In this document: in pieces, positions 33,448 through 39,756 of the stretch
Position numbering within the stretch: the first letter of the stretch is position 1
Layout of the letters: each line of letters opens with the position of its first letter
Source: Klebsormidium nitens
Taxonomy: Eukaryota > Plantae > Klebsormidiophyceae
Assembly (NCBI GenBank): GCA_000708835.1
Contig: DF237003.1
Coordinates: forward strand, 43,419-107,418
DNA length: 64,000 nt
Direction: 5' to 3'
The notes under the pieces: model-generated
The model's input: the letters and a program-made list of their open reading frames with translations, nothing else
Told to the model about the DNA's origin: nothing
Databases searched by the model: none
Program-made: the position numbers and the translations under genes

Positions 33448-36400
33448 ATGGCAGATGTGGATGATCGCCCTCCCCGGGATGATGGTCGGGATGGGCGATC
33501 AGCTCCTCGAGATGACGATCACGATAGACGCAGAGATGTAAGCCGTCTGGTCTTTGTTCATTTGAAGCCTCTTGGTAATCTGCATCAGTTCCAACATGCC
33601 CGCATCTTTTGCAGCCATCTCTTTTCCTGTGTCTTGAGGTTTGTAGGTGCTGTTGCTTGAAACAATGTCAATGTTTTGTTCTTTATGCTTGCAGAGGTAT
33701 GATGATGATCGAAAAGATTATGATCGCCGGGAGCGTGATCGTGGCAGTGGCAGGGACAGGCACCGGAGCAGGGAAGACTATGACGACAGGCGCAGGCACA
33801 GGGATGATTATGACGATCGGCACAAGTGAGCTCTATCAATAAATCTTTTGCATGCGCAGTGAACTTGCGCAGAGGACTCATGCAGTATTAGCACTGTGCG
33901 CAAGAAGATGCAATTACCCATTGTATTATCACTTTTGCATTGCTTTGTCGAAGGTCACGCAGCCGGTTCATTAGTCGGGAGACAGGATCAACCACCATTA
34001 CCATATTATGCTCCGATACTAACAAGTTGGTAGTGACTTGCGAGATTTGCTTTTATATGCAAATGCAGAAAAATGTTGATGGTTCGTCTGGTACTTAAAA
34101 GATCTGTTTCTTGCAGTAGCGCTCAGAAGATTTTCTTAAACTGCCCTGCCCTCAAAGGAAATAATCTCGTTGAGATGCATTGACGAGCATTAACTCCGTC
34201 TGTTTATAGGGGCCGCCATTCCAGAGGTCGCAGCCGCTCGCGGTCCCGCTCCCGCTCGCGCGATCGCAGAGGGTAAAATAGCAGCTGCTTTGCTTTGTTC
34301 TCTTTTCTCAACAGATTACCTGAGGTCCTTGTCTTCAAATCCTTTTCCTGATGAAGCAGGTCCCATTGCCTGATTATTTTCAAGGTTGATTCTTGTGTGT
34401 TTGCAGCAGATCATGTTTGAGCACCTCTGTTCGTCTCCTCCTTCTGTGTCCTGCAAGGACTGAAACGATCGTGCCTTTGTGTTCTTTGTGCAGGCGAAAG
34501 GGGAGTGGGTTTGATATGGCACCTCCGGCAGTAGCTGCACCTCCAACCGCTGGTGAGACACGTCGTCCATTTTGCAGAGATTGCACGCCATAGTTGCATG
34601 GCATCTAGTTCGAGTTACTGGCTTATATTGGTGATGTAGCCATAACCTCCTGTAGGAATCCCCCATTGCTAGCATTGATACAGACAGTTCGGTGCTTGTG
34701 AAAGCACTGACCTCGGTTTGATGACTCGAAACCTGGTCAATTGCCAATGCGGAACACTTTTGTCAACTGTTGAAAGAAACAAGCTGTACTTTAGTTGCTT
34801 TCCTCTCATCTCAAACCCCCTACTGAAACTGTTTACCTGTTGTTTGTCTGTGCTGTGTCGTTTGTTGTTGTGTGTGTTGCTCTATATAGTCATGTGTTAG
34901 AGTGGGAAAGCCTGCCCTGGCCACCAACGAACTTGAAAGGCGCCTTCGGAGCATTGGCATGGCAAGGCAGCCTGCTCCACCTTCTTGAGCTGCCGTCGTC
35001 CTTGTTGTGCGGCATACACAGCAAGATAAGCAGTTGATAGATGCTAGGGCAATCGGAGAGTCAGGCATGGGTGTAGATTATCACGGTTTTTGAGCATCTG
35101 TCTCAGCATACTGCATGAACGAACACGTTTGGCACTCTCGAGCTGCGCCCGAATTGCCTGTTCTTGTGCTCAGCTGTCCATCTTACTGATATGTTCAAAA
35201 TCACCTTGTCATGCAGGCGCAGACGCTGGTGGTGCTGTGTACCCCTTTGGACAGGTAAACCTTTCCAGCATGTCTTGTTCTTGAGGTATACCTGGCATAT
35301 AATTGTGACTAGTGGACGAGGAAGGTCATTTTGGGATTTGCAGTACTAGTCTTACTTCATCCTGCGAAAATTGGTGGTTTGCTGGAGCAATAGTCAGCTT
35401 GCCGGCAGGCATGCTCACCCCCAATGTCTGCTTGCAGTTCCCAGGATTCCCCCAGATCCCTGTCGCTGCAATGACGCAGCAAGCCACCCGTCACGCACGC
35501 CGGGTGTATGTTGGGGGGCTTCCGCCGATGGCCAATGAGCAGGTAAGAGAGGAATATCTCAGACAATACTTGCATTGATTTGGCCGACAACCCCGCTTCA
35601 GACCTGTTTGTCATACCTCAAACAGATTCTGATTATTATGCTTTGATACTTTGGCACACGGATATTCATTGGGCCTGCACATCACACCGGGCTTTGTTCC
35701 TCTGACCCAAACACTCTCTAAAACCTTAACTTCGAATACTGCGTCTCGCAGAGTGTGGCGACCTTCTTCAGCCAGGCTATGCATCTGATCGGGGGCAACA
35801 CTGCTGGCCCAGGTACGTGGTGGCACTTTCGTTTCTGGTCTCTCTTCCGCGACGTGACTTTTTGTCTTCCTGAAACGCATCGCTTGTATCTTCTTGATGC
35901 ATTTTCCTTGCTAAGTGCATGTAATTTAGATTGTTCCCCAGTCTGCTTTGCTGTACACCGGTTACGCCATTGATGCTGCAATAATCAAGGTGTCTGTGAT
36001 GCATACATAGTAGTCAATGACTTTCGGGAATGCTGATTGAGGCGATTTGTCTGCAGGTGACTGTGTGGTGAACGTCTACATCAACCAGGAGAAGAAGTTC
36101 GCATTTGTGGAGCTCAGGACTGTGGAAGAAACCAGCAATGCGATGGCGCTGGATGGAGTCAACTTTGACGTGGGTGCTCTTCTTGAATAGTTATTGCAAG
36201 CAGAGTGGCTTGTCTGATTTCGAGCTGAGAAGTGTCGGAGAGTCTCTGGAGATCAAGATCGAAGTTTCACCGCAAACTTGCCTGCGTTGAGCATGCTTGT
36301 CGCCGGGGCATTCTGATCTCTTACTGGACTGTAACTCCTCTCTGTTAGAGCAGGTTGCTTTGAATCAAAGTAGGGCTGATCCGGTTGCTGCGTGCTTAGC

Positions 36401-39400
36401 TGTACTTACGGGCTGCCTGGATTGATACATTGCAATTCATGTGGCGCCATATGTAACGCCTTGATGCTCTTCTTGAGGAGGCACATCTGATGTTTGCTTT
36501 TTCTCTGCAGGGGGTTGCGGTGAGGGTACGGAGGCCAAGTGACTACAACCCGTCAATGGCAGCGACCCTTGGGCCTAGCCAGCCGAATCCCAATCTCAAC
36601 TTAGCTGCGGTGGGGCTTACGCCAGGGTGAGTTTGTCGAACTGCTGCAATCTGCTGCTACTCACTGCTAATATTTGTCTAAATTGGAGCGTCTGATGGAT
36701 CTTGGACATATGATTTACGAATGTGGTTTGCCTTACGTCCGAGATACTGGGAGTGCCGTGCTATGACAGTGTGCGTCGGCAGAGAGACTCCAGTGGTCTT
36801 GCTTGACTGACCCGGTAATTGAATTCTGCAGAAGCGGGGCTGGCGGAGCAGACGGACCTGATCGGGTCTTTGTGGGAGGCCTGCCGTACTATCTTACTGA
36901 GGAACAGATCAAGGAACTGTTGTCATCTTTCGGGTAAGGGAATGTCAACATGCTGCGTCCTTTCGGGTTGAAAGTACGTTGGCCAGTTCTCGTTTCCTGG
37001 ACGTGTCTCAGAAAAGGGTCCTTCATTGACTTCTGAGGATGATCAAGGAACTGCTGTCATCTTTCGGGTAAGGAAATGTCAAGGCTGCGTACGTTTGGGT
37101 TGAAAGTACGTTGGCCGCTTCTTGTTCCTGGACGTGTCTCAGAAAAGGACCATTTCTTGATTCCTGGGATTGGTGAAGCCGAGGAGGGTTTGTAGGGCTG
37201 AGCTCGGCAGTTTCTGTTAGATTTTTGCAAGAGCAAGTTAGAAGTTCACTAGAAGGTCGCCTCGATTTCTCACGCTCGACAAACAGCAGACGAGATCTTG
37301 GAATCGAATCGTAGGCAGATGGCTCCCTGAGGCCTCAGCAAGCCACTCAGATGCTCCTGGCACCGTCCGTGCAGGCCTCTCAAGGGCTTCGATCTCATCA
37401 AGGACCGGGAGACCGGGAGCAACAAGGGTTACGGCTTCTGTGTGTGGCAGGTGGGCCTCGTATCTTAGCCTGATGTCCTCTGTCGGTTTTCCAGGCCTCT
37501 GCGGGGCTTTGAGCTGGTCAAGGATCGTGACACTGGCAACTCCAAGGGCTATGGCTTCTGCGTGTACCAGGTGAACTTCCCTAGTGGTCATCGTGAATGT
37601 CATCTGCCTACGCTGCTTAGCTGTGTCATGCCAAATTTTAGTGTCCTCTGCTCGTTTGCGGTACACATTTCAATGTCAGGCGTTGAAGAGTTGTCAGGTC
37701 ATGAACGGCTTTCTGTAGTTCAGCAGGAGGTGTTGTCAGGGTCCATGTCGTTTCGTTAAGCCATGACAGATTGCGCTTCCCAATCTGACCCGATTCTCTT
37801 GGCCACGACAGAACCCGGCAGTGACGGACATTGCTTGTGCGGCTCTGAATGGCATGAAGCTCGGTGACAAGACTCTCACTGTGCGGCGGGCCACGTCCAG
37901 GTAAGTCTCCAGCGTGCAAGGACTTTCCGTGGGTAAGGGGCTGATTTAGTGTGTGTTGCAAACGCCCCAACTGTGCAGGATTCATCTGTAGTGGACATTG
38001 CCTGTGCGGGGCTTAATGGCATGAAAATGGGGGACAAGACGCTGACTGTGCGGCGGGCAACAGCAAGGTCCGCCTTTTCGCTGCCTCTGTTTGTCAATTG
38101 AGTGTTCCTATCCCTCTGCGGTTAGGATTTTCTGGCAGCTGTTTCGAGAACATTATGAAGTTGTATCACCCGATGGGGCTGTTTCATGGAAGAGGAGGCG
38201 TTCTTTGTGTCAAGCTTTACGTACCAAGACCTGAAGTTGGAAAAGTCCGGTATTGTTCCATCATTCAAATTGCTGCAAGCGCCATTGTGGTCCTTCTGGT
38301 CAACAACGGTGCGACCCAAAGGCTTTTAGCGCCGAAAGGGGTCAATCTTGATTCGGACGCTGCTCCTTTGAGTGCTCCACTTTTCAAGTCCTGCGGTTGC
38401 AGGCGTTGCTCTTTTAGAGAACAGGAGAAAGAATAGTAAGCAAGTCTTTGCAGTGCTTAACTGTACTCTTGAGCATTTCCTGGCCCTTTTCCGGTCTTGA
38501 ATATCAAGCGACCAATGCTGACTATTCGCTTCTCTGCAGTGGCCAAGCGAAGCCTGATCAGACTGCGGTCCTTCAGCAAGCTCAACAGCAGATTGCAATG
38601 CAGGTGAGCAAGGGAACTCTTGGGCCTCCCCTAGCAATCATGTAAACGGCTGGCTCATCTGGCTGGTGCTCCGGACTGTAGATCGTTGCTTGCTATGGAC
38701 AGTCGAGTCGAGTTACAGACGCTGGTTTGTCAAAGTATCCTTCTGGTCAGTAAGTTTGAGAGTCAACAATAACAGGCCAGCGTCGATAACTCCACGTTTT
38801 AGATCAAATGAATCAAGGTAAGGCTTATTTCTACAGCAGGTCGATTGACTGGTGTGCTCCAATCGCGATTGCAGCTGGGAGGTCTTGTCAGCCCTGGCCT
38901 TGCTGGCACGGGAGCCAACAACATTCCTCTTGGCATGCCCGCAGAGGTGCCAACCAAGGTGCTCGTGCTGCTCTCGGTGAGTTGACTCGCATATCTCCTC
39001 TCTAATCTCTTTTTCGTTTTTGCTTCAGTTGAGATCATACTGAAAGCTCTCTTGTTCTGAATATCTTCTAAGATGAATTGTGGACGATTTGAGATGTCAC
39101 GCTGTCAGCTCAACTAGTTATGCAAGGTCGTTGCGCTGGTCACTTCGCTGGTCAGTACTTCAGAACGACTGTCAAACGGATCTGGCCGCATGCAGAGCCG
39201 TTGTGGTAAGCTTGAACTGGTTTTCAAGAGGTGCTGATCATCCAACACCGCTGTCTGTCCAGGTTGTTACCCCTGACGAGCTGGTCAACGATCAGGACTA
39301 TGAGGAGATCTTTGAGGACATGAAGGAGGAGTGCGCTAAGTATGGCAGCCTTGTCAAGGTCGTCATCCCACGCCCCGATCCTTCGGGGGCGCCTCGGCCA

Positions 39401-39756
39401 GGGGTCGGCAAGGTGAGGAACCTGGGCCTCACATCAATGTTGATACCCGACTGTGGTGACTTTTGGTTACTGGTCACGAGAGGCTGTTTTCTTCGCCGTT
39501 AACCGCAGGTTTGGGATTGAAGCCTTCCGTTTTCTGCAGCATCATTCAGGGCGGTCTGCCGCAAAGTGCCCTACTGGACTGCGAGACGGTCTTTAAGCTC
39601 AGTCTCTCATTCTTGCAGGTTTTTGTGGAGTATGCCGATACCACGTCATCAGCAAAAGCCAAGCAAGCCCTTCATGGGCGGAAGTTTGGTGGCAACGCCG
39701 TCGTTGCTACGTACTATAGAGAAGAGAAGTTCCATTCTGGCGACTACAGCGGCTAG
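33448..39756 (+). CDS. U2AF65: Splicing factor U2AF large subunit (RS domain, RRM1, RRM2, UHM/RRM3) with two duplicated exon pairs in RRM2
   Basis: Exons 33448-33537, 33695-33825, 34210-34272, 34494-34552, 35217-35254, 35438-35542, 35752-35812, 36057-36169, 36511-36626, 36832-36933, [37375-37450 or 37495-37570], [37812-37900 or 37979-38067], 38540-38603, 38875-38976, 39263-39412, 39619-39756. Phases are consistent when one exon of each pair is used. Motifs RKGSGFDMAPP, QATRHARRVYVGGLPP, NVYINQEKKFAFVELRTVEETSNAMALDG, DRVFVGGLPYYLTEEQIKELL, KGYGFCVYQ, DYEEIFEDMKEECAKYG, GRKFGGNAVVA. Confidence 0.96.
36893..37140 (+). repeat. 134-bp tandem duplication of the 3' end and donor of U2AF65 exon 10
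   Basis: atcaaggaactg(t/c)tgtcatctttcgg|gtaagg has donors at 36934 and 37068, each followed by near-identical intron sequence (gttgaaagtacgttggcc...cctggacgtgtctcagaaaagg). Confidence 0.92.

What the first reader, a model, noticed from the sequence alone, without database searches (positions are those of the whole stretch)
37375..38067. Two consecutive pairs of apparently mutually exclusive exons in RRM2 of U2AF65
Seen in sequence: exon 11a (37375-37450, PLKGFDLIKDRETGSNKGYGFCVWQ) and 11b (37495-37570, PLRGFELVKDRDTGNSKGYGFCVYQ) are both 76 nt. Exon 12a (37812-37900, NPAVTDIACAALNGMKLGDKTLTVRRATS) and 12b (37979-38067, DSSVVDIACAGLNGMKMGDKTLTVRRATA) are both 89 nt. All four have AG/GT ends, the correct phase and no stops, and many of their differences are synonymous, which suggests both copies are under selection. 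11a and 11b are only 44 nt apart, probably too close to splice together, and including both members of either pair shifts the frame. Established: these exons encode the RNP1 motif and beta2-beta3 loop of RRM2, which reads the polypyrimidine tract; mutually exclusive exons are rare in plants; vertebrate U2AF35 has a tandem mutually exclusive pair. Inference: up to four U2AF65 isoforms with different 3' splice-site preferences, so the core 3'-splice-site factor would be tuned by its own alternative splicing.
Basis: partly seen in the sequence, partly recalled or inferred. Interest (0 to 1): 0.9.

Follow-up and report, generated by a model that had tools for sequence, protein, structure and literature searches.

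The report
Swappable duplicated exons in U2AF65
In a green alga related to land plants, the gene for the protein that recognises the ends of introns has two adjacent pairs of duplicated exons: RNA data show one pair is swapped in a condition-dependent way, and the other pair, also present in mosses and liverworts, is conserved but mostly uses one copy.

Summary
All four exons sit at the stated coordinates. They are paralogous only within exon borders, and every border except the 12b donor matches an RNA junction.

- **11a/11b:** a true, regulated mutually exclusive pair. Exon 10 joins either copy and either copy joins 12a. 11b makes up 55, 2, 57 and 52% in four runs. No 11a-11b joint or double skip was seen.
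- **12a/12b:** 12a is the default. The 12b acceptor is used rarely (0-17%) and only from 11b. Every contig carrying 12b runs unspliced into exon 13. Productive 12b use is not shown.
- **12b is not decaying.** dN/dS between the paired exons is about 0.12, and 12b is nearly identical to the canonical streptophyte exon. In a related species (L003) all four exons are 98-100% identical. Their synonymous divergence is 0.04, against 0.42 in the gene's constitutive exons.
- **New here:** the same tandem exon-12 pair exists in a liverwort (Riccia) and in mosses. There the downstream copy is spliced productively, and Physcomitrium annotation already carries both isoforms. The exon-11 pair was found only in this alga and L003.

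I found no paper describing either pair. Different RNA-binding preferences of the isoforms remain an inference. The scan has unchecked notes of other such exon pairs elsewhere in this genome.

The parts
33448..39756 (+). U2AF large subunit (U2AF65) coding region; the start is approximate and the 5' exons were not mapped by RNA
   Evidence: tblastn of Marchantia, Chara and Closterium U2AF65 against the window; ORF listing; RNA joints for exons 9-15
36832..36933 (+). Constitutive exon 10 (start of RRM2), donor CGG|gtaagg
   Evidence: Joints 36626>36832, 36933>37375 and 36933>37495
37041..37178 (+). Recent tandem copy of 36907-37040 (last 27 nt of exon 10, its donor site and about 105 nt of intron); no RNA joint uses it
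   Evidence: the repeat finder families D3-D5, 78-95% identity; absent from L003; only low-depth unspliced contigs cover it
37375..37450 (+). Exon 11a, the derived copy (K, I, SN and W at positions that are R, V, NS and Y in every homologue matched)
   Evidence: Contigs exon10-11a-12a at depth 285/818-900/42/258; comparison with the 269 fetched homologues, about 110 of which matched the RRM2 pattern
37451..37494 (+). 44-nt spacer intron holding the only CTRAY branch-point motif for 11b (A at 37473, 22 nt from the 11a donor)
   Evidence: 43/44 identical in L003; no 11a>11b joint
37495..37570 (+). Exon 11b, the ancestral-like copy (one difference from the streptophyte consensus)
   Evidence: Joints exon10>11b at 345/18/55/283 and 11b>12a at 280/0/34/242
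37812..37900 (+). Exon 12a, the default copy, strong donor CAG|gtaagt
   Evidence: Joints into it from 11a and 11b, and 12a>13 at 574/1003/44/502
37901..37978 (+). 78-nt spacer intron, CTGAT branch motif (A at 37944, 43 nt from the 12a donor)
   Evidence: 83.5% identical in L003 against 34-55% for the other introns (62% for the alternative intron 11b-12a); no 12a>12b joint
37979..38067 (+). Exon 12b, canonical-like copy, weak donor AAG|gtccgc; acceptor used rarely and only from 11b
   Evidence: Joint 11b>12b at 0/0/16/16; contigs 37976-38566 run unspliced through the donor; 88/89 identical in L003; 28/29 residues identical to P0166
38068..38539 (+). Intron 12b-13, retained in all 12b-containing contigs; read-through gives a stop after 11 codons
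   Evidence: records 6, 13, 20 and 27; ORF listing
38540..38603 (+). Constitutive exon 13
   Evidence: Joints 37900>38540 and 38603>38875

Best explanation
The gene encodes the large subunit of U2AF in a streptophyte green alga. My guess is a Klebsormidium; this was not verified. Two old tandem exon duplications inside RRM2 created two adjacent clusters of mutually exclusive exons.

Cluster 1 (11a/11b) is shown to work. Either exon is spliced between exon 10 and exon 12a, at roughly equal levels in three studies and almost entirely 11a in a fourth. The choice is therefore regulated. I infer that exclusivity is enforced sterically. The spacer is 44 nt, and the only branch-point motif for 11b lies 22 nt from the 11a donor, too close for both sites to be occupied at once. 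A frameshift followed by nonsense-mediated decay would remove any double inclusion or double skipping.

Cluster 2 (12a/12b) uses 12a by default. 12b has a weak donor that is conserved. It is chosen rarely, only after 11b, and in the sampled cultures it stays joined to an unspliced downstream intron. I infer that 12b is a conditionally used coding exon whose donor needs an activating factor. The unspliced form would be a detained or unproductive by-product.

The exon-11 swap changes beta2, including the position equivalent to human N289 (an RNA contact), the beta2-beta3 loop and the last RNP1 residue. It probably alters how RRM2 binds polypyrimidine tracts. The exon-12 swap changes the alpha2 side, not the beta4 contact residues.
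For: - **Joints and depths:**
- **Frames:**
- **Selection between copies:** omega 0.11-0.13 with dS about 1.3.
- **Related species L003:** the four exons show 4 differences in 330 nt, against 80 in 960 nt for constitutive exons. Synonymous divergence is 0.038 against 0.42, Fisher p = 2e-8. The 44-nt spacer is 43/44 identical.
- **Which copies are ancestral-like:** 11b and 12b match the streptophyte consensus, and 11a carries residues seen in none of the homologues matched (about 110 of the 269 fetched).
- **Bryophytes:** Riccia (L064) and a moss (L014) have the same exon-12 pair. Moss transcripts 100% identical to L014 join exon 11 to the downstream copy and then to exon 13, although its donor is weak. 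Physcomitrium isoforms differ only in a 15-residue indel near the start of RRM1 and in the exon-12 segment.
- **Branch motifs:**
- **Mapping to human RRM2 and its contact residues:** (PMC3616741).
Against: No 12b>13 joint was seen in any of four runs, so a 12b protein isoform is unproven here. Depths are assembler word depths of contigs, which drop rare variants, and only four runs could be laid. The conditions behind the 11a/11b switch are unknown because run names are coded. The steric explanation rests on sequence distances, not on mapped branch points. No binding data exist for any isoform. Nucleotide-level conservation alone cannot separate coding constraint from splicing-signal constraint.
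Confidence: 0.75

Rival explanations
1. In this alga 12b is no longer a coding alternative. Instead it acts as an unproductive splice choice. Selecting its acceptor traps the transcript with a retained intron and a premature stop, which lowers U2AF65 output. This would be autoregulation of the kind common among splicing factors.
For: All 12b-containing contigs retain intron 12b-13, and no 12b>13 joint was seen. Read-through stops after 11 codons. The weak donor GTCCGC and about 25 nt after it are conserved in L003. Extreme synonymous conservation fits a regulatory RNA element. An earlier scan note describes another gene of this genome whose second exon copy is used mainly non-productively (s1-273832, unchecked).
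Against: A purely regulatory exon need not keep the protein sequence. Yet 12b differs from 12a mostly at third codon positions (omega 0.11) and is 28/29 identical to the canonical exon of another alga. The matching downstream copy in a moss is spliced productively despite an equally weak donor. Both roles could coexist.
Confidence: 0.3
2. One member of each pair is a dead duplicate that drifts neutrally, and only one isoform matters.
For: 12b is rarely used in the four runs.
Against: 11a and 11b are both abundant in spliced RNA. All four exons are 98-100% identical in a species whose constitutive exons have dS 0.42 and whose introns no longer align. Real decayed copies of the exon-12 duplicate look quite different, as in the Sphagnum and moss loci with broken remnants.
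Confidence: 0.03
3. Exon choice is directed by competing RNA base-pairing (docking and selector sequences), as in insect Dscam or 14-3-3 xi, rather than by spacing and frame.
For: The exons and the 44-nt spacer are conserved far beyond coding needs, which could reflect RNA structure.
Against: Folding of 37345-37600 and 37780-38100 gives no excess stability (z = +2.3 and +0.6; 199 of 200 and 76 of 100 shuffles fold at least as well). With almost no substitutions between the two species, covariation cannot be tested. Long-range pairings outside the folded stretches were not searched.
Confidence: 0.1
4. The duplicated exons are an assembly or haplotype artefact.
For: None found.
Against: RNA contigs from four independent studies match at 99% or better (a single differing base) and cross the 12a-12b spacer, intron 11b-12a and the exon-10 duplicate; no listed contig crosses the 44-nt 11a-11b spacer. 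A 49-kb contig of another species carries the same order.
Confidence: 0.01

Closest known systems
Vertebrate U2AF1 (U2AF35) exons 3 and Ab, a mutually exclusive pair from a tandem exon duplication (PMC5224494)
   Same: It is the partner subunit of the same 3' splice-site factor. Its duplicated exons are of equal length, are used exclusively and give two protein isoforms. One copy has weaker splice signals.
   Different: It is a different gene and domain (the UHM of the small subunit, against RRM2 of the large subunit), a single cluster rather than two adjacent ones, and in a different kingdom. The origins are independent.
Bryophyte U2AF65 exon-12 pair: Physcomitrium patens isoforms (NCBI 'isoform X1' P0192 against UniProt A0A7I4EZU9 P0168), Riccia fluitans R1flu_000708, moss contig L014
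   Same: The same exon is duplicated, both copies are 89 nt, and the spacer is 65-75 nt (78 nt here). The upstream copy has the stronger donor and the downstream copy ends in (A/G)AG|GT with a weak donor. The downstream copy is ultra-conserved (82/89 nt between moss and liverwort) and shares a 20-nt identical stretch with 12b.
   Different: In the moss the downstream copy is in the assembled mRNAs; here the upstream copy dominates. Bryophytes have a single exon 11. Common origin against parallel duplication is unresolved: the tree groups 12b with the bryophyte downstream copy at only 57% bootstrap, and intermediate lineages such as Closterium have one fused exon. I found no paper describing the bryophyte pair.
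Alpha-tropomyosin exons 2/3: exclusivity through a branch point too close to the upstream donor (from my own knowledge, not checked here)
   Same: A two-exon cluster in which the spacer is too short for the two exons to be spliced to each other. Here the spacer is 44 nt and the branch motif is 22 nt from the donor.
   Different: The branch point was not mapped here. Tropomyosin choice is governed by known tissue-specific repressors; no regulators are known here.
Docking-site/selector clusters of mutually exclusive exons (Dscam, 14-3-3 xi; from my own knowledge)
   Same: Tandem arrays of paralogous exons with strict one-of-N choice and conserved intronic sequence.
   Different: No excess RNA structure was found, and there are only two exons per cluster.

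Membership tests
U2AF large subunit (U2AF65/U2AF2) | N-terminal RS region, U2AF35-binding motif, RRM1, RRM2 and a C-terminal UHM in that order, with close similarity to known orthologues | tested here: met
   Exon translations align along Marchantia, Chara and Closterium U2AF65 at 65-92%. Exons 9-15 are 74-76% identical to Closterium. The RS-rich and GFDMAPP pieces appear in the ORF listing. The best solved-structure matches include human U2AF65 RRM2.
Mutually exclusive exon cluster from tandem exon duplication | Adjacent paralogous exons of equal length and phase with intact splice sites | tested here: met
   76/76 nt and 89/89 nt with AG/GT ends; similarity is confined to the exons
Mutually exclusive exon cluster from tandem exon duplication | Each copy is spliced to the common flanking exons in mRNA | tested here: met
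   Met for 11a and 11b: exon 10 joins each copy and each copy joins 12a
Mutually exclusive exon cluster from tandem exon duplication | Each copy of the second pair is spliced to both flanking exons | tested here: inconclusive
   12a meets this. For 12b only the acceptor joint (from 11b) was seen, and no 12b>13 joint appeared in four runs. Contigs drop rare variants.
Mutually exclusive exon cluster from tandem exon duplication | The copies are not joined to each other, and both are not skipped, in stable mRNA | tested here: met
   No 11a>11b, 12a>12b, 10>12 or 11>13 joints. All such forms carry early stops. This holds only within the detection limit of contigs.
Mutually exclusive exon cluster from tandem exon duplication | Both copies are kept by purifying selection | tested here: met
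   Omega 0.11-0.13 between copies; 98-100% identity in L003, with synonymous divergence eleven times lower than in constitutive exons
Steric-hindrance type of exclusivity | The distance from donor to branch point between the two exons is too short for splicing | tested here: inconclusive
   By sequence, the spacer is 44 nt and the only CTRAY motif is 22 nt from the donor. The branch point was not mapped, and the minimum intron size of this organism was not measured.
Docking/selector RNA-structure type of exclusivity | Conserved competing base-pairings between an intronic docking site and a selector at each exon | tested here: not met
   Local folds are no more stable than shuffles. Long-range pairs and covariation could not be tested.
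Unproductive (poison) splicing for autoregulation | The alternative choice introduces a premature stop, is conserved, and responds to the protein's own level | tested here: inconclusive
   The 12b path seen here retains an intron with a stop and is conserved. Dependence on U2AF65 level or on NMD cannot be tested with these tools.

The most novel reading that the evidence does not exclude
The exon-12 swap is a single ancient invention, older than the split between this alga's lineage and land plants. It has been kept for hundreds of millions of years in the core 3' splice-site factor and lost repeatedly elsewhere. This alga later added a second, independently regulated swap of the RNA-contacting strands (exon 11). 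By switching exon combinations according to conditions, the cell would then change the genome-wide reading of polypyrimidine tracts. An unchecked scan note of a duplicated exon pair in a UHM domain elsewhere in this genome (s1-290900; the gene name is hidden and I take it to be U2AF35) hints that the small subunit may do the same.
Probability: 0.25. Interest if true: 0.85.

Novelty: new member of a known kind. Interest (0 to 1): 0.62.

Why it matters
Mutually exclusive exons are regarded as very rare in the plant lineage, and U2AF65 is the protein that defines 3' splice sites. This gene offers a clear, RNA-supported case in which the RNA-binding strands of RRM2 are swapped at ratios from about 1:1 to 50:1 between data sets.

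There is also a second swap. Its counterpart is conserved, down to synonymous sites, in mosses and liverworts, and is already present but undescribed in their annotation.

This gives plant splicing research a natural pair of U2AF65 variants to compare for polypyrimidine-tract preference. It also shows diversification by exon duplication where seed plants use gene duplicates (U2AF65a/b). The eleven-fold drop in synonymous divergence marks dense, still unknown splicing control signals.

Tried and rejected
- **This species' own protein isoforms.** I could not retrieve them. The representative search and a full-length search with the nearest transcriptome protein listed no own-species entry.
- **12b ORF search.** A protein search with the 12b open frame gave a single hit, which led to L003. 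No RNA-derived fragment with a 12b-13 junction was found.
- **A third, more distant relative (L001/L002).** Its contigs are too short to reach exons 11-12.
- **Locus look-ups.** Look-ups for P0063, P0081, Chara, Marchantia, Physcomitrium and Sphagnum magellanicum failed with 'not on record'. Charophyceae and vascular-plant reference loci therefore remain unchecked, apart from metagenome contigs.
- **Metagenome patterns.** The first pattern, on exon 12, found nothing. The second, on exon 11, gave 59 loci.
- **Rejected readings.** RNA-structure control was rejected for lack of excess stability. An assembly artefact and a dead duplicate were rejected.
- **Tree of exon-12 copies.** It is too weakly supported to decide between common origin and parallel duplication.
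- **Reads.** Only one read-laying run was available, so I could not follow the 11a/11b switch across more runs or hunt for 12b-13 joints.
Full report
**Observation**

They are 11a 37375-37450, 11b 37495-37570, 12a 37812-37900 and 12b 37979-38067. Each is preceded by AG and followed by GT.

Pairwise alignments with 20-nt flanks show that similarity begins and ends at the exon borders (repeat families D1 and D2). All four a/b combinations keep the frame from exon 9 to exon 15. Double inclusion or skipping of either pair gives early stops.

Between copies, 13 of 20 and 15 of 23 differences fall at third codon positions. The Nei-Gojobori omega is 0.13 for exon 11 and 0.11 for exon 12, with dS about 1.3. 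Placing the same number of random substitutions gave as few amino-acid changes without a stop in about 1 of 10,000 trials.

**Identity of the gene**

Marchantia, Chara and Closterium U2AF65 align exon by exon across 35.4-39.8 kb. The RS-rich and U2AF35-binding pieces lie upstream.

The exon-11 and exon-12 peptides match human U2AF65 RRM2 among solved structures. Exon 11 covers beta2, the beta2-beta3 loop and RNP1 (KGYGFCV[W/Y]). Exon 12 covers alpha2 to beta4.

The organism is a streptophyte alga, and the best full-length match is Closterium at 74-76%. I suspect Klebsormidium from composition and the pattern of run labels, but I did not verify this.

**RNA evidence**

The contigs come from four studies. 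Depths are given in the order X1/X2/X9/X11.

| Joint | Depth |
|---|---|
| exon 10 > 11a | 285/900/42/258 |
| exon 10 > 11b | 345/18/55/283 |
| 11a > 12a | 285/818/42/258 |
| 11b > 12a | 280/0/34/242 |
| 11b > 12b | 0/0/16/16 |
| 12a > 13 | 574/1003/44/502 |

- No joint links 11a to 11b, 12a to 12b, 11a to 12b, 12b to 13, or skips a pair.
- 11b therefore makes up about 55, 2, 57 and 52% of exon-11 choices. This is a true mutually exclusive pair whose ratio differs sharply between data sets.
- The contigs that carry 12b (37976-38566, depth 10-27) run through the 12b donor and the whole downstream intron into exon 13. In these samples the 12b acceptor is used at 0-17%, but productive splicing of its donor is not seen.
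- These depths are assembler word depths and contigs drop rare forms, so absence here means 'minor at most'.

**Conservation in a related species**

A protein search with the 12b open frame found one 60-residue product on a 49-kb contig of another sequencing project. That locus, L003, is collinear with the whole gene.

| Feature | Identity to L003 |
|---|---|
| Constitutive exons | 87-95% |
| Introns | 34-55% (62% for intron 11b-12a) |
| 11a | 98.7% |
| 11b | 100% |
| 12a | 97.8% |
| 12b | 98.9% |
| 44-nt spacer | 97.7% |
| 78-nt spacer | 83.5% |

Synonymous divergence is 0.42 in constitutive exons and 0.038 in the four alternative exons (Fisher p = 2e-8).

The weak 12b donor (AAG|gtccgc) and the next 25 nt or so are conserved as well. 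This pattern is typical of regulated alternative exons and rules out neutral decay of any copy. L003 lacks the 134-bp partial duplicate of the exon-10 end described in the side observations.

**Which copies are ancestral-like**

I compared the RRM2 segment of the 269 fetched homologues; about 110 of them matched the pattern I used.

- 11b differs from the streptophyte consensus at one residue.
- 11a has K, I, SN and W where every matched homologue has R, V, NS and Y.
- 12b is 28/29 identical to the exon of another alga's transcript (P0166).
- 12a is more derived (N for D, L for M, S for A).

**Wider distribution**

- Closterium has exons 11 and 12 fused and in single copy.
- A degenerate pattern on exon 11 retrieved 59 metagenome loci. 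Only one, the moss-like contig L014, has two intact exon-12 copies, 75 nt apart.
- Two metatranscriptome contigs are 100% identical to L014's exons. They join exon 11 to the downstream copy and then to exon 13. The downstream copy is therefore spliced productively there, although its donor is weak (AAG|gttggc).
- The liverwort Riccia fluitans has the same pair with a 65-nt spacer.
- Physcomitrium patens proteins P0192 and P0168 are identical except for a 15-residue indel near the start of RRM1 and the 29 residues of this exon. Public annotation therefore already holds both isoforms.
- A Sphagnum paralogue and several moss loci keep only a broken remnant of the downstream copy about 50 nt after the upstream one. 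This shows what real decay looks like.
- Vascular-plant loci show no remnant.

The downstream copies are ultra-conserved (82/89 nt between moss and liverwort, against 69/89 for the upstream copies). They share a 20-nt identical stretch with 12b.

In a tree of the 89-nt exons, 12b groups with the bryophyte downstream copy, but with only 57% bootstrap support. A single ancient duplication and two parallel duplications both remain open. I put them at roughly even odds.

**Mechanism**

Shown:
- exclusive use of 11a and 11b;
- a variable 11a/11b ratio;
- 12a as the default copy;
- rare use of the 12b acceptor, coupled to 11b;
- premature stops in all aberrant combinations.

Inferred:
- The 44-nt spacer holds the only CTRAY motif for 11b, 22 nt from the 11a donor. 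The two exons therefore cannot be spliced to each other, as in the tropomyosin exon 2/3 case (my own knowledge).
- In the 78-nt spacer the motif is 43 nt from the 12a donor.
- Folding gives no sign of docking/selector structures.

Mapped onto human RRM2, the exon-11 swap changes several elements:
- the position of N289, which with K260 and F304 contacts a central uridine;
- the beta2-beta3 loop;
- the last RNP1 residue.

D293 and F304 are unchanged (PMC3616741). The beta4 positions equivalent to K329, L331 and Q333 are the same in 12a and 12b. The exon-12 swap therefore affects the helical side rather than direct base contacts. Functional differences between isoforms remain untested.

**Comparison with what is known, and novelty**

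Tandem-duplicated mutually exclusive exons are a known kind. Vertebrate U2AF35 exons 3/Ab are the nearest precedent, in the partner subunit (PMC5224494).

Searches of the paper library found no description of such exons in U2AF65 of any organism. A 2025 survey of plant U2AF65B genes that included bryophyte isoforms does not mention them either.

I class this as a new member of a known kind. Two points add interest: there are two adjacent clusters, and one of them is conserved in bryophytes.

Earlier scan notes, all unchecked, report other candidate exon pairs in this genome. One is a UHM exon pair 41 nt apart, probably U2AF35. Another is a fucosidase whose second copy is used mainly non-productively.

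**Limits**

- The conditions of the runs are hidden.
- No spliced protein could be submitted to the protein tools.

Noticed in passing
window 36907-37040 and 37041-37178: A third tandem duplication of about 134 bp copies the last 27 nt of exon 10, its donor site and about 105 nt of intron. The copies are 95% identical in the exon part and 78-86% in the intron part. It is absent from the related species L003, so it is recent. No RNA joint uses the second donor. Its unit size (134 bp) resembles those of the older exon duplications (120 and 167 bp).
   Followed up: partly
L065 8124-8174 (Sphagnum troendelagicum); L006, L017, L023, L033, L036, L048, L049, L061: Moss U2AF65 paralogues keep a decayed remnant of the downstream exon-12 copy about 50 nt after the intact upstream copy (for example SSVDITCATLQGKVRDD). 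These are pseudo-exons left after loss of the alternative.
   Followed up: partly
L004 6381-6542 (Closterium sp. Naga37s-1): Exons 11 and 12 are fused into one exon with no intron between them and no duplicate.
   Followed up: yes
window 37345-37600: The exon-11 cluster folds less stably than 199 of 200 shuffles (z = +2.26). This may reflect selection for an open, accessible RNA.
   Followed up: no
This suggests a tandem gene duplicate rather than exon duplicates. Their loci could not be fetched.
   Followed up: no
Same genome, other pieces (scan notes s1-290900, s1-337130, s1-355357, s1-316277, s1-273832): First readers noted further tandem paralogous exon pairs in this genome. They include a UHM exon pair 41 nt apart (probably U2AF35), prolyl 4-hydroxylase, FKBP16-3 and a GH29 fucosidase. 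Short tandem exon duplication may be unusually common in this organism.
   Followed up: no
L001, L002 (Logan SRR14092358/9): This is a third, more distant relative. Its exon 15 is 86% identical to the window and 88.5% to L003. Its contigs stop before exons 11-12, so its full locus would date the exon-11 duplication.
   Followed up: partly
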